From Podarcis pityusensis (lineage: Eukaryota): a stretch of DNA of 64,000 bases. Every line of letters begins with the position of its first letter. Position 1 is the first letter of the stretch. Below, in pieces: positions 4,798 through 62,908 of this stretch. Below the pieces are notes generated by a model. It searched no databases. It worked only from the letters and a program-made list of their open reading frames with translations, and was not told where the DNA came from. A program made the position numbers and the translations under genes. The stretch is from the NCBI GenBank assembly GCA_964106645.2, contig OZ067042.1; one strand, given 5' to 3'.

Positions 4798-5804
4798 AGA
4801 TATTTCTGTGTATGTATATTAAATCCAGAGCAGCCGACATCCATGTGAGCCATTTCCCATAGTCCTCGATGTACTACACGCATGCATGGAACTTTCAGGG
4901 CGACACCTGAAAACCAGTGTGGTGACCCCATACTGCATTTTCTGGATGTCTTCTTGCACATTAAAAATCCCAAGACAACATCCATTCATTAGCCTCACTT
5001 AGAAGATTAATTACAATGACCTACTTCTGATTAATCTTGCTAGATTTCATGCAGTCAATTGCACATTGAGATTAATGTTATCTCCCCACAATGCCCAATG
5101 CTTTGTTTGGACTATTACATTTTAAGTTATTTATTTCTTGATGGTTTCAGCAGATTGTACTGTATAGGGTTCAGTTTATGTTGCTCTCTACAGCTAAGAA
5201 GAATAACAATGTAGCATACATACCTGTTAACAGAAACTTGGAAAACTGAGATTGAAACAGTAATGAGGGACACTTCTAATGGGCAACATTTACCCATCAC
5301 ATTAGCCAGTCATTAAAAGGTTCTCACTATACTTGGAGAACTACTATTTGTTATTCCTCCCCCCCCCCCTTTTGCATACCTTTCTCTCTGACAAACACCA
5401 GTTTACATAGGTGAGCAATTCCTCTGTCAACCTTGATTTATAAATGCATCTATTTTATTATTATTTTTTAATAATATTTTTTATTGCTTTTTTTCCAAAG
5501 TCAAGATCCATCGTCAATTTACACAACAAAAGCAGTTTTACAAAGAAAAAGAAAAAGTTAGAAAGAAGAAAATTCACTTTTCCACATCTTTTTTCATAAT
5601 CAACTGGACTTCCCCAGATCTTCCATCCCTGCATTCTTTACAATAAAAGAATATTATACAGCAAATTAATACCTTATTTCATATGTTTTTGTACTTTCAT
5701 CTATCTATATATTCTAAATTTAAACTTTTCACCGTCATGACTTAATTTCAATCATTTTCGAATCTCAATACTGAAGCATGTTTTTCTCAAAACTTAGCAA
5801 ATTC

Positions 5805-8800
5805 TCAACTTTCATATAGCTTATAATGTTTTTGTAGATAGTCCTTAAATTTTTTCCAATCCTCTTCCACTGCCTCTTCTCCCAGGTCTCGAATTCTGCC
5901 CGTCATTTCGGCTAATTCCATATAGTCCATCAGTTGCGTGTGCCACTCTTCCAGTGTGGGTAACTCCTGTGCCTTCCAATATTTAGCTATAAGAATTCTT
6001 GCTGCTGTAGTTGCATATAAAAAGAAAGTTCTATCTTTCTTTAACACTCTCTGGCCCACAATGCCCAGGAGGAAGGCCTCTGGTTTCTTGTTAAAGGTAT
6101 ACCTAAATACCTTTTTCAACTCATTATAAATCATTTCCCAAAAGGCCTTCACCCTCGGGCATGTCCACCAGAGGTGAAAAAATGTTCCTTCAGCCTCCTT
6201 ACATTTCCAACATTTATTGTCTGACAAATGGTATATCTTTGCGAGTTTGACTGGGGTCATGTACCACCTGTACATCATTTTCATAATGTTTTCTTTTAAG
6301 GCACTACATGCCGTAAATTTCATACCGGTGGTCCCTAACCTTTCCCAGTCTTCAAACATAATGTTGTATCCAATGTCTTGTGCCCATTTTATCATGGCTG
6401 ATTTAACCATCTCATCTTGAGTATTCCATTTAAGCAACAAGTTGTACATTCTTGAAAGCACTTTCGTCTTAGGTTCAAGTAATTCCAACTCTAATTCTGA
6501 TTTTTCCACCTGGAAACCAATTTTTTTGTCCTTTTTAAAGATCTCTAAAATTTGGGCGTAATGAAACCAGTCTCGCACCTTTCCTTTCAATTTTTCAAAA
6601 CTCTGCAACCTCCAAGTGTCACCTTCTCTTTCTATTATTTCACAATATTTTGCCCAGCCACCCCCCATATTAAGTATTTTTGTGGCCTTAGCCTCCATCG
6701 GTGATAACCACCTCGGAGTCTTGTTTTCGAGTAAGTCCTTGTATTTAGTCCAGACAGTGAACAAAGATTTCCTGACAATATGGTTTTTAAACATCTTATG
6801 AGACTTCACCTTGTCGTACCACAAATATGCATGCCACCCAAAAGCATTGTTAAACCCTTCCAGATCTAGGACATCAGTGTTTTCTAACAAAAACCAATCT
6901 TTCATCCAGCAGAAGGATGCAGCTTCATAATACAACCTTAAGTCCGGCAGGGCAAATCCCCCTCTTTCCTTTGCATCTGTTAGTATTTTAAATTTTATTC
7001 TGGGCTTTTTGCCCTGCCAGACAAACTTCATAATGTCCCTCTGCCACTTTCCAAAACACTCCACTCTGTCCACGATCTGCAGGGCCTGAAACAGAAACAG
7101 CATTCTTGGCAATACATTCATCTTAACTGCAGCAATTCTTCCCAACAAGGAAAGTTTCAATCTTGACCAAATTTCTAAGTCCTTTTTGATTTCAGACCAG
7201 CATTTTACATAATTGTCTTTAAATAGATTCAAATTTTTCCCGGTCAAATTAACCCCCAGATATTTCACTTTTTTAACCACATTTAATTCTGTTTCCTTTT
7301 GAAACCCCTCTATTTCTGAAGGTGTCAAGTTTTTTGCCAAGACCTTAGTTTTTTGTTTGTTTAACCTAAATCCCGCCACCCGACCAAACTCAGAAATTAG
7401 TTCTAAAGCTCTTTTTGTGCTGGATTCTGGCTCCTGTAATGTCAAAACCAAATCATCTGCGAAAGCCTTCAGTTTATATTGTTTTCCTCCGACCTGTATT
7501 CCTTCCACCTGCTGGTCCTTCCTGATCAAGTTAAGCAACACCTCCAGGACAGAAATAAATAGCAAGGGTGATAAGGGGCACCCCTGTCGTGTTCCTTTTT
7601 CAATTTTAAACTCCTCTGTCACCACATTATTTACTATCAATTTAGCTTTTTGCTCTGAATAGATTGCTTCAATACCATTTTGGAACGCCCTTCCCACTCC
7701 CATCCCTTCCAAATTTTTCTTCATAAACTTCCAAGATATATTATCAAAGGCCTTCTCCGCATCTATAAAAATCAAAGCTGCTTTTGTATTCAAATTTGTC
7801 TGCAATAACTCCAAAACATCAACAATATTCCTGATGTTGTCAGACAAATGCCTGCCAGGGAGAAAGCCTGCTTGGTCTTTATGAATTACTTCTTTTAAAA
7901 CTTTTTTCAGTCTATTTGCCAAGATATCAGCAAAAATTTTATAATCCACGTTTAGGAGTGAGATGGGACGGTAGTTCTTAAGTTGAGTCTTTTCAGATTC
8001 CAATTTTGGTATCAAAGTGATGAATGCCTCTTTCCACGATTCTGGTGCCCCCTTCCCTTCCATAATTTGGTTACATACCTCCATTAATGGTTGAGCCAAA
8101 TATTCCTTCAATGTCTTATAATATTTGGAGGTAAGTCCATCTGGGCCTGGGGATTTGCCCAATTGCATGTTCTGAATGGCACTTTCAATTTCCTGTTGTG
8201 ATATTTTATAATTCAGGGCTGTTTGTTTATCTTGTGTAAGTTTTTGCAGGCCATGACTTTTTAAGAATTTATTTATCTCCATCTCCACTTGGGGTCCTTG
8301 AGTGTACAATTTTTTAAAATATCTCTGGAAGCACTTTCTAATTTCTTCTGGTTTCTGAATACATTCTCCTTCAACCTCTAGATTGGTAACAAAGTTCAAT
8401 CTTTGTCTCTTTTTCAGCTGCCATGCCAGCAGCTTCCCACATTTATTAGCCGATTCGAATGATCTTTGTTTCATCTGTTTAATTTTCCATTCAATTTCTT
8501 GATTTGTCAGTTTCACATATTGTGCTTGATGGAATTTTATTTCTCTTAAAACCTCTTTTGATTTTGGATTAAGTCTCAACTTTTTCTCTCCGTCTCTTAT
8601 CTTCTCCAAAATCTTGTCCTTTTTACCATTCCAGAGTTTTTTCTTAATAGTATTCTGTTGTATCAGGAACCCTCTCATAACAGCTTTACTCGCATCCCAG
8701 ATTGTTTTCTTTTCCACCGAAGTGTTCAAATTTATCTCAAAATAATCTTTCATCGTTTTTTGGGCCTTCTTCACAATCTCCTGATCTCTAAACAAGGAGT

Positions 8801-9545
8801 CATTCATTCTCCATCTGAAGGATCCAGCTGGTGTAAGTCTTAAGTCTATTTTCAAAGCATTATGGTCGGAGCAAGTTTTGGGGCAGATCTCTATTTTTTT
8901 AGTCTTAGGAGCCAGTCCTCTAGATGTCCAGATTTGGTCGATTCTTGTCCAGGATAGGTGGGCCTCAGAAAAGAATGTTCCCTCTTTACCTAGAGGGTTC
9001 TTTGTCCTCCAAATATCAATCAAGTCCATATTGTCTGTAAGTTCAAAAAAAGTCTTTGGTAGTCTGCCATCTTTAGTCAAATTTTGATTTTGTGACTTAT
9101 CCATATGCGTGGAGACAACCCCATTCATATCTCCCATCAGAATGATGTTAGTATAGTCAATATAGTCCAGCATTATCTCATGCAGCTTCTTATAAAATTC
9201 CGATTTCCCCTCGTTTGGTGCATAAATTCCTACTATCAGAAATTTTTCTCCTTGTGATTGTATTTCAATCGCCAAAATTCTTCCTTGTTCGTCTTTAAAC
9301 ACAAATTTTGGTGCTAGGCTCTCCTTTGCATATATCACAACTCCTCTTTTTTTGACTTTATCTAGTGATGTAAATTCTTGGCCTAGTCTCTTGTTGGTTA
9401 GTACTCTTCTATGGAGCCTAGTTACATGAGTTTCTTGAAGACAGATGACGTCTAATTGTTCTTTCCTCAATATATGAAAAATTCTCTTCCTTTTCTCTGG
9501 GGAATTTGCGCCATTAATATTCCAACTAAGAAGCTGCAAAGACAT
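5805..9545 (-). CDS. L1 ORF2p (1246 aa from the ATG at 9545): APE endonuclease, reverse transcriptase and CCHC zinc knuckle
   Basis: EN motifs SWNING, LQETH, IYAPN, GDMN, RIDQI, SDHNA. RT motifs KSPGPDG, YRPISLLNVDYK, DAEKAFD, RQGCPLSPLLF, FADDL. Zinc knuckle CWKC...HLWWTC. A 14-nt spacer separates it from the ORF1 stop. Confidence 0.95.
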   Translation of the reverse strand: MSLQLLSWNINGANSPEKRKRIFHILRKEQLDVICLQETHVTRLHRRVLTNKRLGQEFTSLDKVKKRGVVIYAKESLAPKFVFKDEQGRILAIEIQSQGEKFLIVGIYAPNEGKSEFYKKLHEIMLDYIDYTNIILMGDMNGVVSTHMDKSQNQNLTKDGRLPKTFFELTDNMDLIDIWRTKNPLGKEGTFFSEAHLSWTRIDQIWTSRGLAPKTKKIEICPKTCSDHNALKIDLRLTPAGSFRWRMNDSLFRDQEIVKKAQKTMKDYFEINLNTSVEKKTIWDASKAVMRGFLIQQNTIKKKLWNGKKDKILEKIRDGEKKLRLNPKSKEVLREIKFHQAQYVKLTNQEIEWKIKQMKQRSFESANKCGKLLAWQLKKRQRLNFVTNLEVEGECIQKPEEIRKCFQRYFKKLYTQGPQVEMEINKFLKSHGLQKLTQDKQTALNYKISQQEIESAIQNMQLGKSPGPDGLTSKYYKTLKEYLAQPLMEVCNQIMEGKGAPESWKEAFITLIPKLESEKTQLKNYRPISLLNVDYKIFADILANRLKKVLKEVIHKDQAGFLPGRHLSDNIRNIVDVLELLQTNLNTKAALIFIDAEKAFDNISWKFMKKNLEGMGVGRAFQNGIEAIYSEQKAKLIVNNVVTEEFKIEKGTRQGCPLSPLLFISVLEVLLNLIRKDQQVEGIQVGGKQYKLKAFADDLVLTLQEPESSTKRALELISEFGRVAGFRLNKQKTKVLAKNLTPSEIEGFQKETELNVVKKVKYLGVNLTGKNLNLFKDNYVKCWSEIKKDLEIWSRLKLSLLGRIAAVKMNVLPRMLFLFQALQIVDRVECFGKWQRDIMKFVWQGKKPRIKFKILTDAKERGGFALPDLRLYYEAASFCWMKDWFLLENTDVLDLEGFNNAFGWHAYLWYDKVKSHKMFKNHIVRKSLFTVWTKYKDLLENKTPRWLSPMEAKATKILNMGGGWAKYCEIIEREGDTWRLQSFEKLKGKVRDWFHYAQILEIFKKDKKIGFQVEKSELELELLEPKTKVLSRMYNLLLKWNTQDEMVKSAMIKWAQDIGYNIMFEDWERLGTTGMKFTACSALKENIMKMMYRWYMTPVKLAKIYHLSDNKCWKCKEAEGTFFHLWWTCPRVKAFWEMIYNELKKVFRYTFNKKPEAFLLGIVGQRVLKKDRTFFLYATTAARILIAKYWKAQELPTLEEWHTQLMDYMELAEMTGRIRDLGEEAVEEDWKKFKDYLQKHYKLYES

Positions 9546-9559
9546 CCTGGAACAATTTG

Positions 9560-10594
9560 TCAACCGATGGGGTTGTCTCCCTTGTCGTCTGTATCCAGAG
9601 GTGGATCTGGTTTTGCACCAGGCGTAGGGGGTGGCCAAGTACCTATTGTTCCCTTCCGAAGGTCCTCCCCGTAGTCGTTTAGGAACTTTTCTTGCTCCTC
9701 TGCTGTTCTAATTTTTACCTTCTTCCCTTTCACACTGAAAGATAGTCCTTGAGGGAATTCCCACCTGTATCGGATTGAGTTGTTTCTCAACAAGCTTGCC
9801 AGATCTTTATATGTAGTTCTTAAATCCAACAACTGTTTTGGTATATCTCTAAAGATTTCTGCTGTCTTTCCCTGTATCACCAATGGATTTTTAAAATGTA
9901 GGCCGAGTATGTTCTCTTTTTCTTGCTTGTATCTCAAAATGATCAAGCAGTCTCTTGGTTTGTCCTTCTTGGCCACTCTTCCCAGTCTAAAGGCGGTGAC
10001 GATTTTAAAATCCTTCTCTTCTGCCAAGCCCCAGAACTTGGATATTTCTGCTGTCAAATAGCCAATCAAGTCTTCTTTTTCTAATTCTGGGATATTTCTA
10101 AGCCTAAGATTGCTTTCCCTGTTTTTCAATTCTGCCATGGACAGATACGCTTGCTGTTCAGTAACCTGTCTGCTCAGTGGTCTTACTTCCCCTCTAAGTT
10201 CCTCTATCCTTTTTTTATTTAGGTCTGCTTTTGTACTTGCTTCCTCGGCTAATTTTCGATTTTCTGTTATACTTTTTTCAAAATTTCCTATTGCCTGTGT
10301 ATTTTGGGCAACTTGGTCTGTCAATCTGTTTATTGTAGCTGTCACCTGGTCGAATTTGGTCGCTTGTTCATCTGCTTTCTTGTTTAAAGCCGCCAGCTGG
10401 TCCAATATTTCTTTAGAAACAGGGTCTAGCCCTCCTGCAGCCATATCCCCAAAAGCTGGCTGTTTAGATTGGCCTTCTTGTAGACCTGTCACAATTGGAA
10501 CAGATGATCTACGTAGCTGCACAGGCAAAGTTGATTGCAACAGTTCAGTTTGTTTTGCTTTCTTAGCAGCCCTTGTTTTTGCTGCACCACTCAT
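9560..10594 (-). CDS. L1 ORF1p (344 aa from the ATG at 10594): coiled coil plus RRM/CTD-like nucleic-acid chaperone
   Basis: Heptad-like region (ILDQLAALNKKADEQ...), NRESNLRLRNIPE motif, AFRLG...KPRDCLI and IFRD motifs typical of L1 ORF1. The 10609 start in the ORF track is a TTG. Confidence 0.9.
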   Translation of the reverse strand: MSGAAKTRAAKKAKQTELLQSTLPVQLRRSSVPIVTGLQEGQSKQPAFGDMAAGGLDPVSKEILDQLAALNKKADEQATKFDQVTATINRLTDQVAQNTQAIGNFEKSITENRKLAEEASTKADLNKKRIEELRGEVRPLSRQVTEQQAYLSMAELKNRESNLRLRNIPELEKEDLIGYLTAEISKFWGLAEEKDFKIVTAFRLGRVAKKDKPRDCLIILRYKQEKENILGLHFKNPLVIQGKTAEIFRDIPKQLLDLRTTYKDLASLLRNNSIRYRWEFPQGLSFSVKGKKVKIRTAEEQEKFLNDYGEDLRKGTIGTWPPPTPGAKPDPPLDTDDKGDNPIG

Positions 10595-13452
10595 TCCACA
10601 GCTGTCCAAGTTTCAAGGTCAAATTGTAAATCCCATGGGAAAAGCAATCCAGAGAATAAACATCCGAGCACAAAAAATTCCAAGACAGCCAGCAGTTCTC
10701 AGAGATAAATAGTTCCACAATCCAGCAGGGGGAGCTCCCCAGAAATTAGGGAGAAGGATAGAAATTTTCCACCATTAAGTTCCCAAATAAAAAATTAAAT
10801 AAAAACCAAAACAAGGGAGAGAACCCTCTGGATTCACTTTAAACTGCAGAAATAAAAGTTCTTTACAAAGGTGCACACAACAGTTCCTTTCTTATAATTT
10901 ACAAAGTAGCCCAATATAACTTTATACCTCATACACAGTTGCCACTGTCTGATGTTACTTTGTATCCAGACAGCCCGAGAGCTGAGTTCGTAACTTTGTA
11001 ATCCACAAAAGATAGAGAGAAAAATCACAGTCTCTGTCCACTTATAATATGGTTTTAACTTTTCTTTAACTTTTAACCAATCAAGTCCGAATTTGCAGGG
11101 TATATTCCAACTTCTTTTAAGCTCCTTTCAACGCTTCCGTTTTAATAAAACTTTGCTTGATACTTTAAACAAAGACGGAAGACTGACTTCCTTTTTAGCG
11201 TCTCCCGCTTTCAGCCGAAATTTACAAATTTGAGTTCAAATAGAGTCTCAGATTTCTTACTCACGAGTAAGTTGTTTCAAAATCAAATGTTGAAGGAAGA
11301 AAGGTCAGCGCTCATCAGCAGCAGCCGCGCGGCTTCACTTCCGCGGAAAGAGCGATGGATTCACATCACCGCTACCCCCTCCACGTTCCGGGGCCCCTTA
11401 CGGAGTCCCTTCTTCGTTTCCGAGGTCGCTCCTGGTGCCCGCCGAATCCCACGGCCACGGGCTCACTCTACCCGTGGTTTTTCTGAATGGGTCGTCGCTG
11501 TGCCGCAGCGCACGACCCTTTTCCGCGGAGCCCCTCTTCAGCAGCTGAAGAGGACCGCCATTGCCGTTTCGCGCCGCCTCCATCTATTTTAAAGGTGCTT
11601 ATTCCCACTCGGAAGCCTGATGGATTCACCATGCCAACTTTGCACATCATGGACAGCTATCCAAGTACACTCTGTTTGTTCTCTGTCATAAGGGATGTTC
11701 ATTGCTCAAGTTATAAAGCCTTGAACAGTGTCTATCATGGAAAACTAGTTTACATTTTAAATAGCCACATAAATACAAGAGCTCAGGTGTTGAGGTAATG
11801 GATCTCTTAGAATGCAGTGAGTTCACCTGCTACACATAGGGGAAGGAAAGCAGAGAGATAATAAAATGAAGGTTTATCTTTTTAGGTGGAAGAACCCAGC
11901 TTGTCCAATGTATATCTGGACCAGGCCATAAACCAGATCTGGATGTAGAGATTGTATTCTTAGTTCAGGATGCCTGAGATCAGTGCCTTGAGCTGGACAT
12001 CTAACAAACCAGTATTATTTCCCTTGAACAGGCACATCTGTCAATCATAGTGAGAGGAACCAATGTTGCATAAGATTGTGCAAAAAATCCATTAATTTCT
12101 CTGTTTACTTGGCTTTGTAAAATTACCCTATTCTCCTTGTTGAGAAATGATTTCCTAGGTTTGGTTTCTTAGAAACATAATTACATTTCTTTGCCATTTT
12201 GTCGGACATCTTGTTTATTTTTGTGATTTTAAATGACAACTTGGAAGGGAGTTAGACAAAAGTACAAACAGTTGCCTCTTCTGAGGGAATAAAGTCCATC
12301 ATCTTTCAAAACAATATGTGCAGTGTGGTTCTCCTGCAAGGGCAAACTTCATCATTTTGGGGTGGTTAAAATAGAAATCACTTAACCTTAACCTCCCCTT
12401 GTGTTCCGTTTGCAGTGAGTCTGAAAACAGGTGAAATGACAAACATTCCACTTGGTAAACGGGCAATAATTGATTAGCAATGAGCAACGCAACTGGGACC
12501 TTATTTGAGCTACAATAAAGCTTAGTTGACTGGAGAAAAAAAGTACCTGGCCTCAAGAGGGGAGGGGAGAGAAAACCTTAATTAAAAATCCATTTAATAA
12601 TACTGGACAGCAAGAATTTGAGATAATGAAATCACAGGTACCCAAAAACTGAAGAGATAGAATGGACCTTAGAGCAAGAAAACTACAACAAAGAGGAGAA
12701 AAACAACTGGAAAGGGATACAAAACAACAGACAGGCACACATGCAGCCAGAAGGGGTGGGTGGGGACTCTGAGAAGCGTATGTGCAAACTTGAAAGGAAA
12801 AAAGAGAGAAAACAAAGGGAACCAAAAAAATAAATAATCAAAGTGGATGTTGCCTGTTGGAAAGAAGAAAGGAAATAGAATAAAAGGGAACAAATAAATC
12901 ACATGGAAAGCCCTAGAACTGAACAGAGGGAATGTGAAATGCCCCAGTACGAAAGGCCGGCAAAATAGCAACCAAATTAACACAAACCATGAAGAAAAGA
13001 AAAGAAAAAGAGTGGAATGAAAACACATTGATTGAAGTATTGATTTAAAATTGCTTGTTTGGAAACAGAAAGGGATTGGGAAGGATGCCAGTAGTGCATT
13101 GGTCTTCTAAACATCCTTGTCTCCCAGGCAGATCTCACATGACCATGTGATAACCAAATGTTTTATGCTTTTTAAAACATTCCTCCCCCAGTTACGGTGT
13201 TTGAACTTCCCTGGTGGAAAAATTCACAGTGATTAAAATCTAGACCTGTCTGTCAAAATGAAAGATCTCTGCTATCTCTCCACCCACTGCCCACTGAAGC
13301 TCAGGGCGCTGCCCAAGTCAGCTAGCAAAGTTCTCATTTGCAAAGGGAAGCAAAGCATTAGCCTTGGTATGAAGTAGAAACTAAGTAGGACCAGGTTAGC
13401 TAAAAAACTAAGTATGAGGCACCTCATGTTTAAATATCTTCAGGAAAAACTA

Positions 13453-20278: not shown

Positions 20279-21743
20279 CAGGGCCTGATGAGCTGCGCCT
20301 AAAAGTACTAAATAACTTTGTCGATGTTTGACAAAGGAAGTCTCACTGAAATAAATAAGGCTTAGGTTGGGGGTGGCTACAGAGCAGTGTTTCCCAAACT
20401 TGGGTCTCCAGTTGTTTTTGGACTACATTTCCCATCATGCCTGACCACTGGTCTTGCTAGCTAGGGATGATGGGAGTTGTAGTCCCAAAACAGCTGGAAA
20501 CACGGATATAGTGGAATCTAATATAGCTTGCATATGTGCTCTTTCTTTACAGAATTTGTGCATTCTTTTCTGAGTTCTGGGACCCTTTCCCATTGCTTCA
20601 CAATGGGAAGGAATCCCCAAGTGCATTTGGGGCACAGCTATGTTGAGAAGAAAAACCATGGGACATATTACGAGTGTATAACTAGGTGGAATGGGATCTT
20701 TTTAAGAACAAGGGCATTTGAGAAGAATATTGTGAGAGAACATGTTATAATGAGCCATATAAGTCTATGAACTAGTCTCCCAGAGGATGTGGATATACGA
20801 TTCAGTGTTTATGAGGCTTAATAAAAATAAATGGAGTAGAAATTCCTGCAGCTACGGATCTCCCTGTCTGTGTAAATCCCTCATTCCCCATGGGTTAAAA
20901 CCTACTCAGCAGCTGTCTTGCCATCAGTTCACCCATCCTCACAATGTTCTACAGTTAATGAACTCTGTGTCACCCTGGGCAAATCTCTTGTTAATAATCT
21001 TGGCACCATCCGTGCATACTCCAGCCAGGTCCGGCCATTTTTATGTTCACTTTGTAATGTAGTAAGTGATGCATCCAGACCTTGCTGCAAGGAAGGCTGC
21101 ACTGGTACAAGGAGCACTTAACCTCTTAGTAACTCGAAGAAGATGCCAAAGACTGTCCACAGAACATTGGAAATAGCAGGAGGGCAAAGGAAAGGGGTGC
21201 TTGTTCTGGGAAGCTGCCAAGTCCTGCCAATTTCCTTCTTTTTTTCAGATGATAAATCCAGCAGCACTGGACTGACATGGGGGGAGGGAGAGGGAAAGGA
21301 AGCAGGATCATGGCAGGCCCCACCACATTTCACATACATTCAGAATATACCACATGAGCATGAAACAAGAAGGATTCCTACAGGCTTGATGTGCCTACAG
21401 TTTGTTTGCATCTACAGTCTGACCCAACAGGGCCAGAACTGTGACACAATAAAGAGTCGTGCCTTCAGTGCAGCTGGTCCAACTCTATCAATTTCACTCC
21501 CATCAAGTCGTGGCCAGGGCTGCAGCCCAGGTGGGCTTGTGCAGCTCTCCTGGCTTCCTGACGCTGTTCAACACTTCCAGTTTCTGAGAGGGAATGGGGA
21601 AGGGTGCATGGAGCTCAGTGCAATGCAGGTGCAGAGTTAACAGTGATGGAGCGGCTCTGCCATTGCGCCCACAGTAAGCTCAGCTTCCTGCTGCCTTGCT
21701 CCTTTCCTTTTCAGCAACCAACAGGGATGTGCAGCAGTGCAGT

Positions 21744-25660: not shown

Positions 25661-27660
25661 GTATGGAACCTTTTTCAGCAGGAGGGCCATATTCCCTGGT
25701 GGAGAACCTTCCAAGGACTGTATGCCAAAGGTGGATGGGCCATAAGCTATCAGCAGACATGATTTTTACCTTTATACAATAGGCTGCATTCTAGCCACAC
25801 AAAAATTAGAGGTTAATATGCACACACATCTCCATCCTTCATCCAGGAAGCAAGAGGCATTATCTTAATTCAAGGGCATATCCCAGAGAGGCAAAAACGC
25901 TCTAGCAGAGTCTGGATAAGGACTGGAGAAGGTTGGGGCATAGCTTAGGAAGAGCACCAGAGACCAGATAGAGAGGTCTGAAATGTTGCATTCGTCTTCC
26001 AGGCCTGAGATTCCACACCTCTAGTATGAACAGTACTGAACTAGATACAGCAGTATTCTATTATCTATCTTCCTATGATCTAGCAGGGCTTTTTTGACAA
26101 CTATATGTGGATTTATTGTGTTAATTGTACTAGTTATAATGCCAATGCATCTATCCCAACTTTTATTGTACATTTTTTATACTATGGTACATGTTGTGTT
26201 ACAGAACTGTGGCTTTTTGATTGATATATCAGTCTGACATGCAAATCTTTTAAAAGCAGAAAAGAATTGTATAGTGGGATACTGCTCCAAACTTGGTCAC
26301 ATGAAATTATAGTGCAAAATGCCTGAGATTGGGGTTGCAAACATTATTTTTTTCCTGGGAAAGATTAACATGGAAATTAGCACTAAATTCTACTAGGTTT
26401 CCAGAAGTGGCTTTGACGTAAAATGCAGAAATGATCAGGTAAGGAAACATCAAGAAGGCAGAAAAAATGTCTGAATCATGTAGCCTGAAATCAGCACAAG
26501 CTGGTGTTTTTCTTCACTAGCTGAAATGTCTATGTGAATTTAAGTGACCACACATAAATGTCAAGTTTCACATGCTCAATGAATGTGACCAGTTTACCAA
26601 AAACGCAGCTCCTTTCAGAGATACTACTCAGCCCAGTTTCTCAAGTCACCAAAATAGTTGTGTGAACCCAGCCTAAACACAGTCCAATTAAACAGATATA
26701 GTGTACATTAATAATAAAATCATTTCACAGATATCTTGAGCAGCATACTTGAGAAAATTTCAGATTTTCCCCCCAGTCCCTTATTATAAATGCTTACTTT
26801 ATGACTATCATAAATAAGAGCATACATTAACAAGAGATTTTTTTTTAATGACTCTGGATAGCTTCTTTAACAAGAGACAATTAGTGTGAGAGCAACATCG
26901 TTCCAAAATAACCTGCATGTTCCCAGCTCTTCTTCTGTAAATTGAAGACGCTTTGCAAAACTGATGCCTTTAAATGAAACAGCAAGCATTTCTTTATAAC
27001 TGCCCCCCTCATCAAATAGGGTTCAGCCAAGAACAGATGGTCTTGATGGCAATCTGAACATCAGTTCTTTCATGTGTACCAAGGAAATGGATGTCAGCCT
27101 ATTGCGACATCATAATCTTGTCTGATAACTGCTAGCACTTGAAGGAAGTAGTAACCTTTTGGTATTTTCACATCTCATGTATTCTAAGAAAACTGACATC
27201 AGAGTTTGTGCTAGACTTTCTCAGTATAAAGTCAAACCTGAAACAAGTCATATTTTCCCAGTGTCAACCTGCTTACAAAAGGCCACACAGGACTACAGAA
27301 ATGGTACCCCCTGGAAAATTTCAGAGCTATGGGTCTGTTTTGATATAATCTTGGGGGAAAAGAAACTACCTTAAATTTATTTCATGGTGTTCCTACTTCA
27401 TGCTAGTAACAGAAACAACTAATGTGCTGGGTGAAAACGTACTTCCTTTTATCTGTCCTGGTGTTAGCCATTTTAGCCACACTGTATATAATTTTATATA
27501 TAGCTCTTGACTTCATATCTCCTTGCTCACGTTTCTAAGCTAAAAGCCCCAAATAGTGAAAACTTTTCTTGCAGGGAAGTTGCTCTGCATGAATTAAAAT
27601 ACATAAATTATCTTTGTTTATTGAATACATTTATATACCACTTGATTATTTGCATTTCTA

Positions 27661-29793
27661 TTTTTTTTTATAAGATATTTATTGAGATTTTCAAAATGTT
27701 ACAAAATAAAAATAAAAAAGAAGAAAATACAAAATAAAAATGGTTACCAAAGTAGAAAAGGGGAAAAACAAACCACTTCCAACAATACGAATACAAATTC
27801 AAAATAAGAAAAAAAACAGAAAAAAACAAAAATACACCAGAGACATTTAAGAACATTTAAAAACAAATTCATTATTCTCAAATCCTCAACTGTCATTACC
27901 TCCTTTCTTTGACCTCCTCCTCCTCCCTTTCTTTGTATCCTAGTTATTAATTATCCCAGCAAATCCTTTCCATATTTCATAATATTCTGTCATTACATTA
28001 CCTTAAACTGTTTTAATCTTATCTTTCTATATAAAAAAAAACACACCTTGAAACTTAAAGCTTAAATCTTATCCTTACCAACTTCTCATAGCCATAATAT
28101 TCTTTCATAATTCTTTAAACATCTTTACTAAAGCCGAGTAATTTCATTCCAACATCTTTCTAACATTCATCAATTTTATAAAACAGTCCTAATAGTAAAA
28201 AAAGAAATACAAACAGATCCAATCTTCATCCAGCGTCCCTTCCTCCTGGTCCCGGGTTTTGTCAGTCCTTATTATCCCATCGATCTAGCGCATTAACCTG
28301 GCAACCTTATATCCGAGGCCCTCAAGTCTCTTCCATGTCCCTTCTGCAGCTCTTCTTCATATTTGTAACTGTATTTTCCCTTGTCTCCTGCTCGTGGTAA
28401 CTCCAGCTTGGCAATATTTTTGACCCTTCTTGACAGATCAGCCCCTTTTCCATATTCAACACTAAATTCCATGTGATATTTAAAAACATGTTTCAAAAAC
28501 CCTCCAAAATTAAGAGCCCCCACAATCCCAAACATCTCACGGCCCATTGCCAGATTTGAAAAGTCCAAACATCCCAGCATAGGGGGGTCAATCCAGCCCC
28601 CCATTTCCAAGCAAAACCAAACTTTTTCTTTCCAAATCTGGCTTTTTCCAAGTTCATTTGTCAAGTCCGAAAGCTCATATTCCTGTTGGGCCTGATTAAA
28701 TCACTCCTGATTTAATTCCTGGGTGGACTCCACATACTTTCCCACTGTCTGTTCAAAATTTCCCACTGCCTGTTCAAAATTTCTAGTCGAAGTCGCCATC
28801 AAATTCATCTTCTCATGTAACTGTTCCAGTAGGGCATTTGTTTTATAGAAAGCACACAACAGAGCTTCTGAATACATTGTCCTGCAAGGTCAAATGTCTA
28901 TTCCCACGATTGTAATCTGTAACAGCTGCCGGCTCCCTGGAATTGGTTACAGTTTCACAGTCTTCCTCTAGGGGGAAAACTTCTATTTGTTCTTGCAACA
29001 AAGTTTTCCTTTTTGAGATATTTTGTCAATATTTGTTCCTTTAAAATGCGAAGGGAAACAGTGGAATCACTATGTTTCTCTTCTTTTAGCTATCTGTCAA
29101 AAACGTTTGTCTCTGGTCAATGAGCTTCAAACGTCAGTCCTGACACCCCGCTCCAGGATCAGGACGGTGAAAAGTTACTTTACTTTAAACTCACTTTAAA
29201 CAGTCCGAAAAAGATCCCCCTTCTTCTCCTACTGTCGAAGGGGGGTTCCACAATTTTAAATGGTGAAATCCAATCCTTTAAAGGCGATTTTCTGAGCTTT
29301 AGTTTACGTTGTCTTTGCTTTATTCTGTCTACAAAAGAACGGAAGGCTGACTTCCTGTTTAGACCTTCCCGTTCTGTACCAAATTGAAATAAATTTTTAA
29401 ATCCAATTCCTTTCTGCTCGCAAGTCCTTATTTAAGGTCCAGTTGTTCAAAGTTTAAGTACTCACGGGTGCTTATTTTAGAGTCCAAATTGTCCCAGGAA
29501 AAAGGCAGCGCTCTCCGGCAACGGCTATGCAGCTTCGCTCCACGGAAATAGCAGTTGACTCTCAGCACCGTGCCACTTCCCCCTCTTCACTTTGGAGCCC
29601 GTTAGTGGGTTCCTTTGCGAGTTGGGGGGGGCGCTAAGGGTGCCTGCCGAGTCCCATGGTCACAGGCTTCATCCGCCTGTGATTTTTAAAAGGGTACCCG
29701 CTTCGCCGTAGCGGAGAAGACCCGTTTCACGCGGAGCTAGTCCCTCCAGTTCAGAGGGAGTCCGCCATTGCCGATGGCGCCACCCCAGAAGTC
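27661..29793 (-). mobile_element. Non-autonomous L1-derived retroelement (2.13 kb, HAL1/half-L1-like architecture)
   Basis: Perfect 17-bp TSD GATTATTTGCATTTCTA (27644-27660 and 29794-29810). AATAAA (27678-27683) plus A9 tail. 5' end and several 5'UTR blocks are similar to the L1 at 5458-11580. ORF1-like ORF and ORF2 C-terminal remnant present, no EN or RT. Confidence 0.85.
28293..28877 (-). pseudogene. ORF1-like reading frame of the non-autonomous element (194 codons, one in-frame TGA at 28701-28703)
   Basis: MYSEALLCAFYKTNALLEQLHEKMNLMATSTRNFEQAVGNFEQTVGKYVESTQELNQE*FNQAQQEYELSDLTNELGKSQ... continues in frame with the 28293-28664 ORF. QAVGNFEQTV matches L1 ORF1 QAIGNFEKSI at protein and DNA level. 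Confidence 0.65.
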
Positions 29794-31170
29794 GATTATT
29801 TGCATTTCTAACTGGTGTATGTAAAAAAATAAAAAATAAAATCCATAAACATATATATACTTGCAGTAAAGATATGGCTTATTACAAAGAAGCTGTTACA
29901 TATTGTCACCTGTTTTTTGTGGGGGTAGGCTGCATGCCAAGACCCTTATAATTCCCTGACCCAGAAAGTGTTATAATCTAAACAAGGATTCAAATTGTTG
30001 AAATAGCCAGACAAGGTAATGGCCCTCTAAGGTAACAAAGGAATTGACTCTGTGCCAGATGGAAAATGGGTAGGCTCCCTCCCTCAACTCGCTAGGATTT
30101 GGAATGACAAAGATCAAGGGGGAGAACTCATTTATGTGAGCCAGAAGCTAAAATCCAGTTATGTGAGCCAGTATGTTTCCAGGCACAATTCAAAGTGTTG
30201 GTGCTGACCTTGTGGTGGCGTGCAACAATATTTACTTCACTGATTTAGAGACAATGATCGACAATTACACTTGCCTATTGATTTTAACTCCTTTGCCACT
30301 CATTCAGCTAACTTGTTTTGTTTCATATAAAATATGCCAATAGAATACGTAACAGGAAACTTGGCATGAACACCAGGAGAGCTGAAAACATAATGAGCAT
30401 CTCTTTGTTTATTTTTAGAAGATACCACTATCAACCTAGTCAATAAAGTGTTTGGAAACGTAACACGTTTCGACTCATGTTCATGTGTAACTTCTAAGAA
30501 AAGCAAAACAAAGTTTCTTCAGTTTTAGGGAAGGATGATAAATGGGTGCATTTTGTTTGGTTGCAGGAGCTTGTGTCAACTTTATTGACTTTCCACACAG
30601 AAAAACAAAAAAGAAAAACCTTTAAACAATTCGTTTGGAGCATCTGTAAAGGCAACTTGCGTCTGCTGTGAGTAAATGGATTCTGATCACTTCTAGGCAC
30701 CAGCCTGAGAAGAGAATAATTACCTTTGCTGGGGGTGATGGCTGAATCTTGATTTATCTATGCTTTTCATTCTGACTGAATGTAAACCAATAAATAGTGG
30801 TTGGGGCAGGATAACTGGTTAGGCATGAATTCTGCCCAACAGTGTGAAACTTCAAAATGTGGCTTCTGCATTTTCCTCTCACCTTTTTCCCACAATTATG
30901 GAGGGAGAAAATTTAAAAGATTCTTATTTGCTCTAATGAAGCAAAATAACCTACATGCATGTACAAAGCAATGGAAAAAAAGGTCAGAAAAAATTCCCCA
31001 GAAGTTTCTGACCAAAGCAGCAATAATTTTGAGGTTTAGAATGTGAGTGAGAGTCATTCCTTATTGAGGTGATTGTTATTTTTTACCACTATTGCTGTGA
31101 TATCACATGCCAAGGGGGAATTGGGAGCAAGCAAACCATCAAACTTATCCCTTTCTGCGGTCTTCATTGC

Positions 31171-31330
31171 CAGTGCTTTTTTTCTGGGGGAAATGCAGGG
31201 GTATGCATACCCCTAAACATTTTGTGAATCTAAGTTTGGCCTCATTGAGGGGCAGTATTTCAATATGAGTAGGAAAATGAGAGTACCCCTAAACATTTTT
31301 TATTACTATTTTTAGGGGGGGAAAGCACTG
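31171..31330. mobile_element. hAT-type MITE (same family as 19314-19459)
   Basis: Near-identical body and TIRs. Degenerate 8-bp TSD TTCATTGC/CTCACTGC. Confidence 0.78.
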
Positions 31331-33640: not shown

Positions 33641-33983
33641 TACCAATCTGTGCTGCACTTGTGATGCTCTATTTTCCATCGTGTTGTTATTTATTATTTG
33701 TAAGCCACTTGGGTTTCACTTGAATGAAAAGCAGCACAGAAATATAATAAACCAAACCAAATCAAAATCACAATTCAGCAAACAAGAGAGAGAAGGCTTA
33801 AACAGGAAATATTTTTATGAGATCAAAAACCAAAACAACATATTTCAAGGACCAGATTACACAATGACCTCCAGAATCATTATAGCAATGTTTTTAATTA
33901 GATGTAGAGCTTCTCACATACTGTATACAAGCATATCCACACACCCATGCATTTGCACACGAAAACACAGCAAAATTGAATTA

Positions 33984-34209
33984 CAGTCATACCTTGGTTC
34001 TCAAACAGAATCCATTCTGGAAGTCCGTTTGACTTCTGAAAACATTCAAAAACCAAGGCGCGGCTTCCGATTGGCTGCAGGAGCTTCCTGCACTCAATCA
34101 GAAGCCACATCGGACGTTTGGCTTCCAAAAAACACTCACTTCTGGGTTTGTGGCGTTCAGGAGCCAAAACAGATGAGTACCAAAGCATTCGAGAACCCAG
34201 GTGCGACTG
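33984..34209. mobile_element. Tc1/mariner MITE
   Basis: Imperfect TIRs CAGTCATACCTTGGTTCTC / GAGAACCCAGGTGCGACTG with TA TSD. Confidence 0.75.
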
Positions 34210-34951
34210 TACAGCCAAACTAATTCTTCTGGAGGCCATGCCTTGCCCCACTATAATCCACCAAGCCAAATGCAGTTCAATCACCCTCCTCTTTTTTTCT
34301 GCCTGCTACAAAAAACAAGGTTTGTGTCTGTTAAGCATCTCACAAGACACATCTGATGGGCTGCATTTGGTTTAGTTTGCCACATGCTAACCTGGCCTGA
34401 ATTAGTCTGTCATTCATTCATTTATGGTTGACTTGTCCCTTTACATCTTGTTTGTCCAATAAAAAAAGATGTGCTTGCCTTCTTTGCTTTGTTTCCTGCC
34501 AAACAGGTCTGCTAACACATAAATACAAGCAGGAAAACATGAGAGACTGGAATGAATGCAATTCCAAGTGTAGCTATAGCCTACACAACAGCTGCAAAAT
34601 CACATTGCACAGAACACCTACACTCATAGGAAAGAACAGCCATTTCCTCAGTGACAGGCTTTTGTATATTGAATGGTAAGGAAATGAAATATCTGTGCAA
34701 CAGAAGGGAAAGATGATTGGAGCCCCTACAATTTAACACCATCACCTTCATTCATAAAGGACTAAAACACAAAAGGCCCTGAGTGTAGCTTCCATCTTTC
34801 GTCTCAGAAGCTGGCAACACAGCAAATAAGCATTTCTACTGTACAAGAATGGTAATGAAAGTTGCATATCCTCCAAGATCTTGAGTCCCAAAATGAGGAT
34901 GTGCGTCTTCCGATCTTTGTTCCCATGTGGGTCACATGACCTGTGTAACAT

Positions 34952-62696: not shown

Positions 62697-62908
62697 TACA
62701 GATAGGTAGCCGTGTTGGTCTGCCATAGTCAAAATAAAAAAAATCCTTCCAGTAGCACCTTTAAGACCAACTAAGTTAGTTCTTGGTATGAGCTTTCGTG
62801 TGCAAGCACACTGTGTATCTGAAGAAGTGTGCTTGCACACGAAAGCTCATACCAAGAACTAACTTAGTTGGTCTTAAAGGTGCTACTGGAAGGATTTTTT
62901 TTATTTTG
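62697..62908. mobile_element. Penelope-like element terminal-repeat (pLTR) insertion arranged as an inverted repeat
   Basis: 15-bp TSD ACTTCCTGTTCAAGT (62682-62696 and 62909-62923). Perfect 86-bp arms 62727-62812 and 62826-62911. Contains a minimal hammerhead core of the kind known from Penelope-like elements. Confidence 0.75.
62815..62852 (+). ncRNA. Minimal type I hammerhead ribozyme motif
   Basis: GUAU-CUGAAGA-A-[GUGUGC UU GCACAC]-GAAA-GC-UC^AUAC. It has the CUGANGA and GAAA boxes, stem II, a palindromic AGCU mini stem III and a 4-bp stem I (GUAU/AUAC). Predicted cleavage after C62848. Confidence 0.7.

What the first reader, a model, noticed from the sequence alone, without database searches (positions are those of the whole stretch)
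27661..29793. Candidate lizard 'half-L1': a 2.1-kb non-autonomous L1 derivative that retrotransposed as a unit
Seen: the element has its own 17-bp TSD, a TT/AGAAA target resembling the L1 endonuclease site, AATAAA and poly(A), so it moved by retrotransposition. Its 5' end (GGCGCCATCGGCAATGGCGGACTCCCTCTGAACTG) parallels the intact L1 5' end (GGCGCGAAACGGCAATGGCGGTCCTCTTCAGCTG), and both have 5'UTRs of 0.9-1.0 kb. It carries one ORF1-like ORF. Of ORF2 only the extreme C-terminus is recognisable (28218-28266 reads TDKTRDQEEGTLDEDW versus TGRIRDLGEEAVEEDW in the L1). Known: HAL1 elements are ORF1-only L1 derivatives described in mammals. Inference: this is an analogous, independently derived squamate parasite mobilised in trans by L1 ORF2p, with a related autonomous L1 16 kb away. 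It is much diverged from that L1, so it is not a simple deletion of that family.
Basis: partly seen in the sequence, partly recalled or inferred. Interest (0 to 1): 0.8.

Follow-up and report, generated by a model that had tools for sequence, protein, structure and literature searches.

The report
Lizard L1-derived mini-retrotransposon family
This 2.1-kb insertion is one (now dead) copy of a real family of short lacertid-lizard retrotransposons derived from L1 that have lost the reverse-transcriptase gene, keep a shrunken ORF1 with a new conserved tail, and presumably copy themselves with enzymes borrowed from full-length L1s.

Summary
27661-29793 (minus strand) is a complete retroposed unit. 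It has a perfect 17-bp target-site duplication, AATAAA and a 9-nt poly(A) tail. Its 300-nt CpG-rich head is about 69% identical to that of the intact L1 at 5458-11580.

It is a family, not a local deletion. Three more full-length copies with the same architecture and different duplications lie in Podarcis lilfordi, and partial copies lie in five Logan run assemblies. At least four deeply diverged subfamilies exist (down to 28% protein identity).

The ~200-aa ORF is a shortened ORF1: coiled coil, half an RRM, a trimmed CTD and a new tail. This is detectable only by profile comparison (E 3.9e-8; C-terminal half alone 1.4e-5). An 82-nt remnant of the ORF2 end starts at the ORF's stop codon (E 1.5e-5).

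The tail motif KGxGRDLRASDIRxPG shows clear purifying selection. The rest of the ORF does not. The window copy carries an in-frame stop.

Not shown: trans-mobilisation by L1 ORF2p, transcription and copy number.

I found no published description. Other first-stage notes from this scan report similar elements elsewhere in this genome; I did not check them.

Verdict: a new, HAL1-like variant of a known kind; moderate interest.

The parts
27644..27660 (.). Target-site duplication, copy next to the poly(A) tail
   Evidence: Identical 17/17 to 29794-29810.
27661..27669 (-). Poly(A) tail (9 nt)
   Evidence: T9 on the + strand, directly abutting the TSD.
27678..27683 (-). AATAAA polyadenylation signal
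   Evidence: TTTATT on the + strand, 8 nt upstream of the tail. It sits at the same position in L001, L002 and L008.
27670..28213 (-). AT-rich 3'UTR (about 545 nt) with a GGAGG-repeat purine tract
   Evidence: Collinear with the 3'UTRs of L001, L002 and L008. Only the last ~30 nt weakly resemble the L1 3' end.
28214..28295 (-). Remnant of the last ~27 codons of L1 ORF2, beginning at the stop codon of the mini-ORF1
   Evidence: An nhmmer profile of three copies gives a single significant hit on the L1, at the end of ORF2 (E 1.5e-5). It reads TDKTRDQEEGTLDEDW here and in L001, and TDMTRDQEEETLDDDWK in L002. The frame is not kept in L003-L006.
28293..28877 (-). Mini-ORF1: 194 codons plus stop, broken in this copy
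   Evidence: Intact relatives are 196-215 aa (P0001, P0002, P0003, P0005, P0007). hhalign of the family against lacertid L1 ORF1p gives prob 95%, E 3.9e-8. The C-terminal half alone matches the ORF1p CTD at E 1.4e-5.
28701..28703 (-). In-frame TGA that breaks the ORF in the window copy
   Evidence: P0001 and P0002 have Cys here, and the window also lacks two adjacent codons.
28737..28778 (-). Tandem 7-codon duplication (NFEQAVG NFEQTVG) in the coiled coil
   Evidence: Present in the window copy, P0001 and L008. Absent in P0002 and P0004. It is a subfamily marker.
28296..28343 (-). Conserved C-terminal tail KGHGRDLRASDIRLPG
   Evidence: Across 7 copies of at least 4 subfamilies, 8 residues are invariant, each encoded by two synonymous codons. 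Pairwise differences at codon positions 1/2/3 are 0.10/0.15/0.43. The motif is absent from the L1 in every frame.
28878..29793 (-). 5'UTR (916 nt)
   Evidence: Element positions 57-298 and 432-481 match L1 5'UTR positions 70-307 and 403-450 at 68.8% and 82%.
29494..29793 (-). CpG-rich head, presumed internal promoter
   Evidence: GC 0.60 and CpG o/e 0.67-0.90, against 0.17-0.6 downstream. The L1 shows the same profile. The head is conserved in L001, L002, L004 and the L1, with three palindromes; 8 of 35 predicted pairs carry compensatory changes.
29762..29772 (-). Conserved box GGCAATGGCGG at +22 to +32
   Evidence: The AATGGC core is invariant in four family copies and the L1. Its resemblance to the YY1 box of human L1 is from my own knowledge and was not tested.
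29794..29810 (.). Target-site duplication, copy next to the 5' end
   Evidence: Identical to 27644-27660.
5458..11580 (-). Intact full-length L1 (candidate ORF2p donor), 16 kb away
   Evidence: 11-bp TSD TAAAATAGATG. ORF1 is 349 aa and ORF2 is 1277 aa, with Exo_endo_phos (5.5e-16) and RVT_1 (1.2e-40).

Best explanation
The element is one copy of a non-autonomous, L1-derived retrotransposon family of lacertid lizards (about 2.1-2.2 kb).

Each full-length copy has these parts:
- an L1-type 5'UTR with a 300-nt CpG-rich promoter head
- a ~200-aa 'mini-ORF1'
- an 82-nt stub of the ORF2 end
- an AT-rich 3'UTR
- AATAAA and poly(A)

The mini-ORF1 comprises the ORF1 coiled coil, about half an RRM, a trimmed CTD and a family-specific 13-aa tail.

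Likely mechanism:
1. RNA polymerase II starts at the fixed GACTTC 5' end, directed by the internal head (inferred).
2. The RNA is polyadenylated (shown by the structure).
3. The mini-ORF1 is translated. At least its C-terminal tail is needed for propagation (inferred from purifying selection).
4. ORF2p from autonomous L1s, such as the intact one 16 kb away, nicks TT|AAA-like targets and reverse-transcribes the RNA from its poly(A) tail. This gives 13-19-bp duplications (inferred, because the element has no endonuclease or RT of its own).

The lineage has evolved as a short element for a long time and has split into several subfamilies. The window copy is a dead-on-arrival or decayed insertion with a nonsense codon.
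For: Retroposition hallmarks.

Homology to L1, collinear in three separate segments:
- 5'UTR, E 4e-14
- ORF1, by profile: E 3.9e-8; CTD alone E 1.4e-5; pairwise N-terminus to P0010, E 4e-6 to 5e-7, and CTD to P0020, E 5e-4
- ORF2 end, E 1.5e-5

The ORF1p reference set is bona fide: it hits human L1 ORF1p structures 2ykp/2yko at E 7e-4 to 1e-3.

No RT or endonuclease: no other ORF of 50 aa or more exceeds 62 aa, and there are no Pfam hits.

Family:
- L001, L002 and L008 are full-length and collinear, with their own TSDs and the same first nucleotides.
- Partial copies L003-L007 come from five Logan runs.
- Distant subfamily proteins P0005, P0007 and P0009 share the architecture and tail.

Targets: TT|AAA in L002; in L001 a TT|AAAA target fits one placement of a boundary that the run of A leaves ambiguous; T|TAGAAA in the window copy.

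Selection on the tail.

Candidate helper: an intact L1 in the window.
Against:
- Copy number is unknown. Only 4 full-length and 5 partial copies were seen, most found through intact ORFs, which biases the sample.
- dN/dS over the whole ORF (0.31-0.44) is not clearly below the out-of-frame controls (0.33-0.94).
- Between distant subfamilies the three codon positions differ about equally. Most of the ORF may therefore be weakly constrained.
- AlphaFold gives no confident fold beyond the N-terminal helix (pLDDT 43.8).
- Invariant ORF1p motifs are missing: NLRIR, RDCLI, and RWEFPQG in intact form. Canonical RNA binding is doubtful.
Confidence: 0.82

Rival explanations
1. The family is L1-derived and trans-mobilised, but its ORF is a non-functional relic. 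On this view, propagation needs only the promoter head, the 3' end and the poly(A) tail. The conserved region around the ORF end is kept as an RNA or DNA signal rather than as protein.
For: - Whole-ORF dN/dS is not distinguishable from the out-of-frame controls.
- Codon positions differ evenly between distant subfamilies.
- No confident fold.
- The window copy, L007 and L008 have broken ORFs.
- The stretch around the ORF end and ORF2 stub is also the best-conserved nucleotide segment across subfamilies.
Against: - In the last 16 codons, changes pile up at third positions (extra states 6/6/18).
- Eight invariant residues each use two synonymous codons, and the stop is at the same place in all 7 copies.
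- Just downstream, the frame is not kept.
- Proteins as low as 28% identical keep the same length (182-215 aa) and end motif.
Confidence: 0.15
2. The short copies are recurrent by-products of a full-length L1, formed by splicing of its RNA or by template switching, like human SpIREs. They would share a junction without being a self-propagating lineage.
For: Recurrent splicing also predicts a shared junction with different TSDs. Other internally deleted L1 forms exist in Podarcis; for example P0010 is an in-frame ORF1-ORF2 fusion.
Against: - No full-length ORF1p close to the mini-ORF1 exists among 1.84 billion representative proteins. The best full-length hit, P0010, has E 8e-4.
- The nearest L1 5'UTR is only about 69% identical.
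- Subfamilies that differ by more than 30% in the UTR and about 70% in protein all keep the short architecture.
- The tail motif occurs only in the short elements.
Confidence: 0.04
3. The copies are processed pseudogenes of one or a few host genes that were domesticated from L1 ORF1 (as L1TD1 was). The purifying selection would then reflect a host function.
For: The C-terminal motif is under selection. P. lilfordi annotators called some copies as proteins.
Against: - Every copy seen is itself a TSD-flanked, poly(A)-tailed insertion.
- Each carries an L1-type promoter head and starts at the same nucleotide.
- No intron-bearing parent was seen.
- Several deep subfamilies would need several source genes.
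Confidence: 0.04
4. A single full-length L1 insertion at this locus later lost its interior by deletion.
For: None beyond the L1 likeness.
Against: The same architecture occurs at three other loci with different TSDs.
Confidence: 0.01

Closest known systems
HAL1 ('half-L1') elements of mammals (Smit 1999 and Bao & Jurka 2010, as cited in PMC5753468)
   Same: Both are L1-derived, lack ORF2, keep an ORF1-derived ORF, amplified as families, and arose independently of each other. PMC5753468 states that HAL1s originated several times in mammals.
   Different: HAL1 encodes ORF1p (PMC5753468). This family's ORF is about 200 aa against about 345 aa, has lost roughly half the RRM and part of the CTD, and has gained a conserved 13-aa tail. 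It also keeps an 82-nt ORF2 stub. It occurs in lacertid lizards, and its nearest relatives are lacertid L1s, so its origin is independent.
SpIREs (spliced integrated retrotransposed L1 elements of humans; from my own knowledge)
   Same: Both are internally shortened L1 RNAs that were retrotransposed as units with TSDs and poly(A).
   Different: SpIREs are near-identical to their parent L1 and arise anew each time. This lineage is deeply diverged from every L1 found and has its own subfamilies.
RIME/ingi and NARTc/L1Tc pairs of trypanosomes (from my own knowledge)
   Same: Both are non-autonomous elements made of the 5' and 3' ends of an autonomous non-LTR retrotransposon, mobilised in trans.
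   Different: Those elements are about 0.26-0.5 kb and non-coding. This family keeps a coding ORF with a selected motif.
HeT-A of Drosophila (gag-only non-LTR retrotransposon; from my own knowledge)
   Same: It encodes only an ORF1/Gag-like protein and depends on another element's reverse transcriptase.
   Different: HeT-A belongs to the Jockey clade, is telomere-specific, and has a full Gag. There is no sequence relation.
L1 ORF1p (structures 2ykp/2yko)
   Same: The order of coiled coil, RRM and CTD is kept in the profile alignment. The lacertid ORF1p profile hits 2ykp/2yko.
   Different: The mini-ORF1 profile itself finds no solved structure at E of 1 or less. Most invariant ORF1p residues are gone.

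Membership tests
L1-dependent (L1-derived) retroposon | Flanked by a target-site duplication of about 7-20 bp | tested here: met
   17/17 bp in the window copy. About 13-19 bp in L001, L002 and L008.
L1-dependent (L1-derived) retroposon | 3' poly(A) preceded by AATAAA | tested here: met
   The same holds in the three other full-length copies.
L1-dependent (L1-derived) retroposon | Insertion at an L1-endonuclease-type site (TT|AAAA in sense orientation) | tested here: inconclusive
   L002 is TT|AAA. L001 fits TT|AAAA only under one placement of a boundary that the run of A leaves ambiguous. The window copy is T|TAGAAA. L008 is degenerate. Four sites are too few for a profile.
L1-dependent (L1-derived) retroposon | Sequence homology to an L1 | tested here: met
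   5'UTR E 4e-14. ORF1 profile E 3.9e-8. ORF2 end E 1.5e-5.
L1-dependent (L1-derived) retroposon | No reverse transcriptase or endonuclease of its own | tested here: met
   No other ORF of 50 aa or more exceeds 62 aa, and there are no Pfam hits.
L1-dependent (L1-derived) retroposon | Mobilised by L1 ORF2p in trans | not testable with these tools
   Needs a mobilisation experiment. An intact L1 is present in the window.
HAL1-type (half-L1) element | Encodes a complete ORF1p (coiled coil, RRM and CTD) | tested here: not met
   182-215 aa against 339-376 aa. There are gaps inside the RRM and CTD in the hhalign alignment. Invariant ORF1p motifs are absent. There is no confident fold.
HAL1-type (half-L1) element | ORF2 absent | tested here: met
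   Only an 82-nt stub of the ORF2 end remains.
HAL1-type (half-L1) element | Amplified as a family with a shared structure | tested here: met
   Four full-length copies in at least two genomes and five partial contigs. The size of the family is unknown.
HAL1-type (half-L1) element | Descent from the mammalian HAL1 lineages in Repbase/Dfam | not testable with these tools
   Repbase and Dfam are not on hand. The nearest relatives found are lacertid L1s, which argues for an independent origin.
SpIRE-like recurrent splice product | Near-identity to a full-length parent L1 outside the junction | tested here: not met
   The best full-length ORF1p hit has E 8e-4. The nearest L1 5'UTR is 69% identical.
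SINE | Pol III head derived from tRNA, 7SL or 5S RNA | tested here: not met
   No tRNA and no Rfam match in 27740-29900.

The most novel reading that the evidence does not exclude
The mini-ORF1 is not a decaying relic but a parasite-specific adaptor. It would be reduced to a coiled coil that joins or mimics L1 ORF1p trimers, plus a new C-terminal peptide (RDLRASDIRxPG) that captures L1 ORF2p or a host factor on the ribosome. If so, a non-autonomous LINE derivative has evolved its own protein tool to hijack its helper. That would be a lizard counterpart to the way Alu uses SRP9/14.
Probability: 0.2. Interest if true: 0.72.

Novelty: new variant of a known kind. Interest (0 to 1): 0.5.

Why it matters
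ORF2-less, ORF1-bearing L1 parasites are described for mammals (HAL1). I found no such description for squamates in the held literature.

This finding shows that lacertid genomes, which hold many co-existing L1 lineages, also support a long-lived, diversified lineage of L1 hitchhikers. It offers a natural experiment on what an L1-borne RNA minimally needs to be copied: the promoter head, about 200 codons of remodelled ORF1 with a selected tail, the ORF2 end stub, the 3'UTR and poly(A).

There is also a practical point for annotation. Gene predictors have already called these ORFs as 'hypothetical proteins' in Podarcis lilfordi.

Tried and rejected
So there is no depth-based copy number, no empty site in sister species and no RNA evidence.
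- Pfam gave nothing on the ORF pieces, P0007 or P0010.
- Pairwise BLASTP of the ORF against the neighbouring ORF1p and ORF2p gave only a weak coiled-coil hit. My idea that the ORF's second half derives from the ORF2 C-terminus was rejected. The profile comparison places it on the ORF1 CTD instead.
- AlphaFold with the 11-sequence alignment gave pLDDT 43.8, so I ran no fold search. The ESM Atlas gave no usable hit. The PDB sequence search with the family profile gave none.
- dN/dS by Nei-Gojobori looked low (about 0.36), but the out-of-frame controls were similar. I rejected it as evidence.
- A DNA profile of the ORF against the L1 was not significant (E 0.52).
- A third word search, with the family profile, added no new members.
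- An exact look-up of the window's 123-aa ORF piece found nothing on record.
- There is no second copy in the window.
- Five literature searches found no lizard HAL1-like report. Bao & Jurka 2010 is not held.
Full report
**The insertion**

On the minus strand, 27661-29793 has all the marks of a retroposed RNA:
- A perfect 17-bp direct repeat (27644-27660 and 29794-29810) sits exactly at its ends.
- AATAAA (27678-27683) lies 8 nt before a 9-nt poly(A).
- The 5' end reads GACTTCTGGGG.

In sense orientation the target is T|TAGAAA, close to but not exactly the L1 endonuclease consensus. No tRNA or Rfam family matches the body, so it is not a SINE. No second copy lies in the window.

**Relation to the neighbouring L1**

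An intact L1 lies at 5458-11580 on the minus strand.
- It has an 11-bp TSD.
- ORF1 is 349 aa. ORF2 is 1277 aa with endonuclease and RT domains.

The element is collinear with this L1 in three separate places:
- **5'UTR.** 68.8% identity over 250 nt (E 4e-14) and 82% over 50 nt.
- **ORF1.** See the section on the ORF below.
- **ORF2 end.** The last ~27 codons of ORF2 match an 82-nt stub (28214-28295) that begins at the stop codon of the element's ORF. Pairwise this is weak (E 0.47). A profile of three family copies gives one significant hit on the L1, at exactly that place (E 1.5e-5).

Both elements have a 300-nt CpG-rich head followed by AT-rich sequence. An alignment of the first 150 nt of four family copies and the L1 shows a conserved GGCAATGGCGG box at about +22 to +32, and three palindromes. 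Of 35 predicted pairs, 8 carry compensatory changes. With only five sequences this is suggestive, not proven. The likeness of the box to the YY1 site of human L1 is my recollection and was not tested.

**It is a family**

I searched the 135-aa piece of the ORF downstream of the in-frame stop. This found a 201-aa 'hypothetical protein' of Podarcis lilfordi (P0002), a 196-aa Logan protein (P0001) and a 199-aa P. lilfordi protein (P0003). Their loci show full-length elements that are collinear with the window copy from its first base to the poly(A).

| Locus | Identity to window copy | Target-site duplication | Notes |
|---|---|---|---|
| L001 | 86-91% | AAAAGTATGACTCA[C/A]GCGA | intact 201-aa ORF |
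| L002 | about 68% in the UTR | AATCTATGGCGTGTG | inside a zinc-finger coding sequence |
| L008 | 90.5% over 2030 nt | degenerate | frameshifted ORF |

All start with GACTTC(C/T)GGG, which points to a defined transcription start.

An exhaustive profile search added more distant relatives: P0005 (212 aa), P0007 and three variants (215 aa), P0009 and P0008. Their short Logan contigs carry the same ORF end and, in L004, the same 5' head. It also excludes a local post-insertion deletion.

**What the ORF is**

The window ORF (28293-28877) has 194 codons with an in-frame TGA at 28701-28703. Intact relatives have Cys at that position. I searched it in pieces and never read it through or repaired it.

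Direct comparison with the neighbouring ORF1p gives only a weak coiled-coil match, and Pfam finds nothing. Pfam also fails on the genuine lacertid ORF1p, so that negative says little.

To test ORF1 descent I collected eleven lacertid L1 ORF1p sequences. Their profile hits human L1 ORF1p structures 2ykp/2yko. Results against this set:
- The family profile aligns end to end: probability 95%, E 3.9e-8, 192 columns, with gaps inside the RRM and CTD.
- Without the coiled coil, the C-terminal half still aligns to the ORF1p CTD (E 1.4e-5, 60 columns).
- Pairwise, the N-terminal 90 residues match the ORF1 part of P0010 (E 4e-6 to 5e-7). The C-terminal part matches several ORF1p CTDs (down to E 5e-4).

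So the ORF is a shortened ORF1. It has the coiled coil, roughly half of the RRM, a trimmed CTD, and then a tail (HGRDLRASDIRLPG) found in no frame of the L1. AlphaFold is confident only for the N-terminal helix.

**Is the ORF needed?**

- Within the close subfamily, dN/dS is 0.31-0.44. Out-of-frame controls give 0.33-0.94, so I do not count this as evidence.
- Between distant subfamilies the three codon positions differ about equally.
- The last 16 codons are different. Across seven copies of at least four subfamilies, eight residues are invariant and each is written with two synonymous codons. Pairwise differences at positions 1/2/3 are 0.10/0.15/0.43. The minimum extra states are 6/6/18, which by my own chi-square arithmetic on those counts gives p of about 0.01. 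The stop codon is at the same place in all seven.
- Immediately downstream, the reading frame of the ORF2 stub is not kept in L003-L006.

I conclude that the ORF is translated in source elements and that at least its tail is functionally constrained. The function of the rest remains open.

**Mechanism**

Shown: the architecture, the retroposition hallmarks, L1 descent, the absence of RT and endonuclease, and multiple independent insertions.

Inferred: transcription from the internal head, translation of the mini-ORF1, and target-primed reverse transcription by ORF2p from autonomous L1s. The intact L1 16 kb away is a candidate, but its proximity is not evidence.

I weighed four alternatives:
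- **A relic ORF.** This stays plausible for most of the ORF.
- **Recurrent splice products (SpIRE-like).** No close full-length parent was found, and the deep subfamilies all keep the short form, so this does not fit.
- **Retrocopies of a domesticated host gene.** Every copy seen is itself a TSD-flanked, poly(A)-tailed insertion with an L1-type promoter head, so this does not fit either.
- **A local post-insertion deletion.** Excluded by the three other loci.

**Comparison with known elements and novelty**

The closest known kind is mammalian HAL1, an L1 derivative encoding only ORF1p that arose several times (PMC5753468). The family works like a HAL1 but fails one defining feature, a complete ORF1. 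It is also of independent, lacertid origin.

Five full-text searches found no description of such elements in lizards. Repbase and Dfam could not be consulted, and Bao & Jurka 2010 is not held. The family may therefore be catalogued without my knowing.

**Earlier notes from this scan**

Other first-stage notes on the same genome list further 2.1-2.4-kb RT-less L1 derivatives with 205-218-aa ORFs. I could not see their sequences, so they are leads only. If they belong to the same family, the copy number in this genome would be substantial.

I did not knowingly send those letters to any search tool afterwards. Later tool calls used 27740 onward or the ORF and 5' parts.
- There are two exceptions. 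Local alignments in the closed sandbox read the whole element file. The 'relatives' look-up of the search of earlier findings widened my range of 28293-29793 on its own to 26793-31293, which covers those places. It returned nothing.

Noticed in passing
window 5458-11580 (-): Full-length L1 with an 11-bp TSD (TAAAATAGATG). ORF1 (349 aa) and ORF2 (1277 aa, EN + RT + Cys-rich C-domain) are both intact and overlap by about 80 nt. It looks like a potentially active element.
   Followed up: partly
P0010 (Podarcis raffonei XP_053229072.1): This annotated 340-aa 'uncharacterized protein' is an in-frame fusion of the N-terminal half of an L1 ORF1 to a mid/late part of ORF2. It is therefore another kind of internally deleted L1 in lacertids. 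It echoes first-stage note s1-717256.
   Followed up: no
L002 2980-3085 and 5256-5340: The L002 copy sits inside a C2H2 zinc-finger coding sequence. The flanks read CGKSFS..G.L..H..TH on both sides of the TSD.
   Followed up: no
window 29644-29793 (-) and 11431-11580 (-); L001 3079-3228; L002 3086-3235; L004 1-140: The first 150 nt of the family and of the L1 share a GGCAATGGCGG box and three palindromes. Their arms change in a compensatory way between copies (8 of 35 pairs). This could be RNA hairpins or palindromic protein-binding sites in the promoter.
   Followed up: partly
window 28737-28778 (-): An exact 7-codon tandem duplication in the coiled coil is shared with P0001 and L008 but not with P0002 or P0004. 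Conversely, an 18-codon segment (MREEDVAESWAPEMEGAA) is present in P0002, P0004 and P0003 and absent here. Both indels are in frame.
   Followed up: partly
L008 740-815 and 2985-3060: The L008 copy appears to have inserted into another repeat. Its TSD has decayed at CpG-like positions, which suggests an older insertion than the window copy.
   Followed up: no
window 27900-27930 (-): A purine tract (GGGAGGAGGAGGAGG) in the 3'UTR is kept in L001 and partly in L002. It recalls the G-rich tract of mammalian L1 3'UTRs (my own knowledge).
   Followed up: no
window 21143-21640 (+) and 33681-34223 (+): Two further ORFs of 165 and 180 aa with no Pfam match. Their nature is unknown.
   Followed up: partly
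window 62815-62852: Another first-stage note reports a minimal hammerhead ribozyme in a Penelope-like insertion here. I did not examine it.
   Followed up: no
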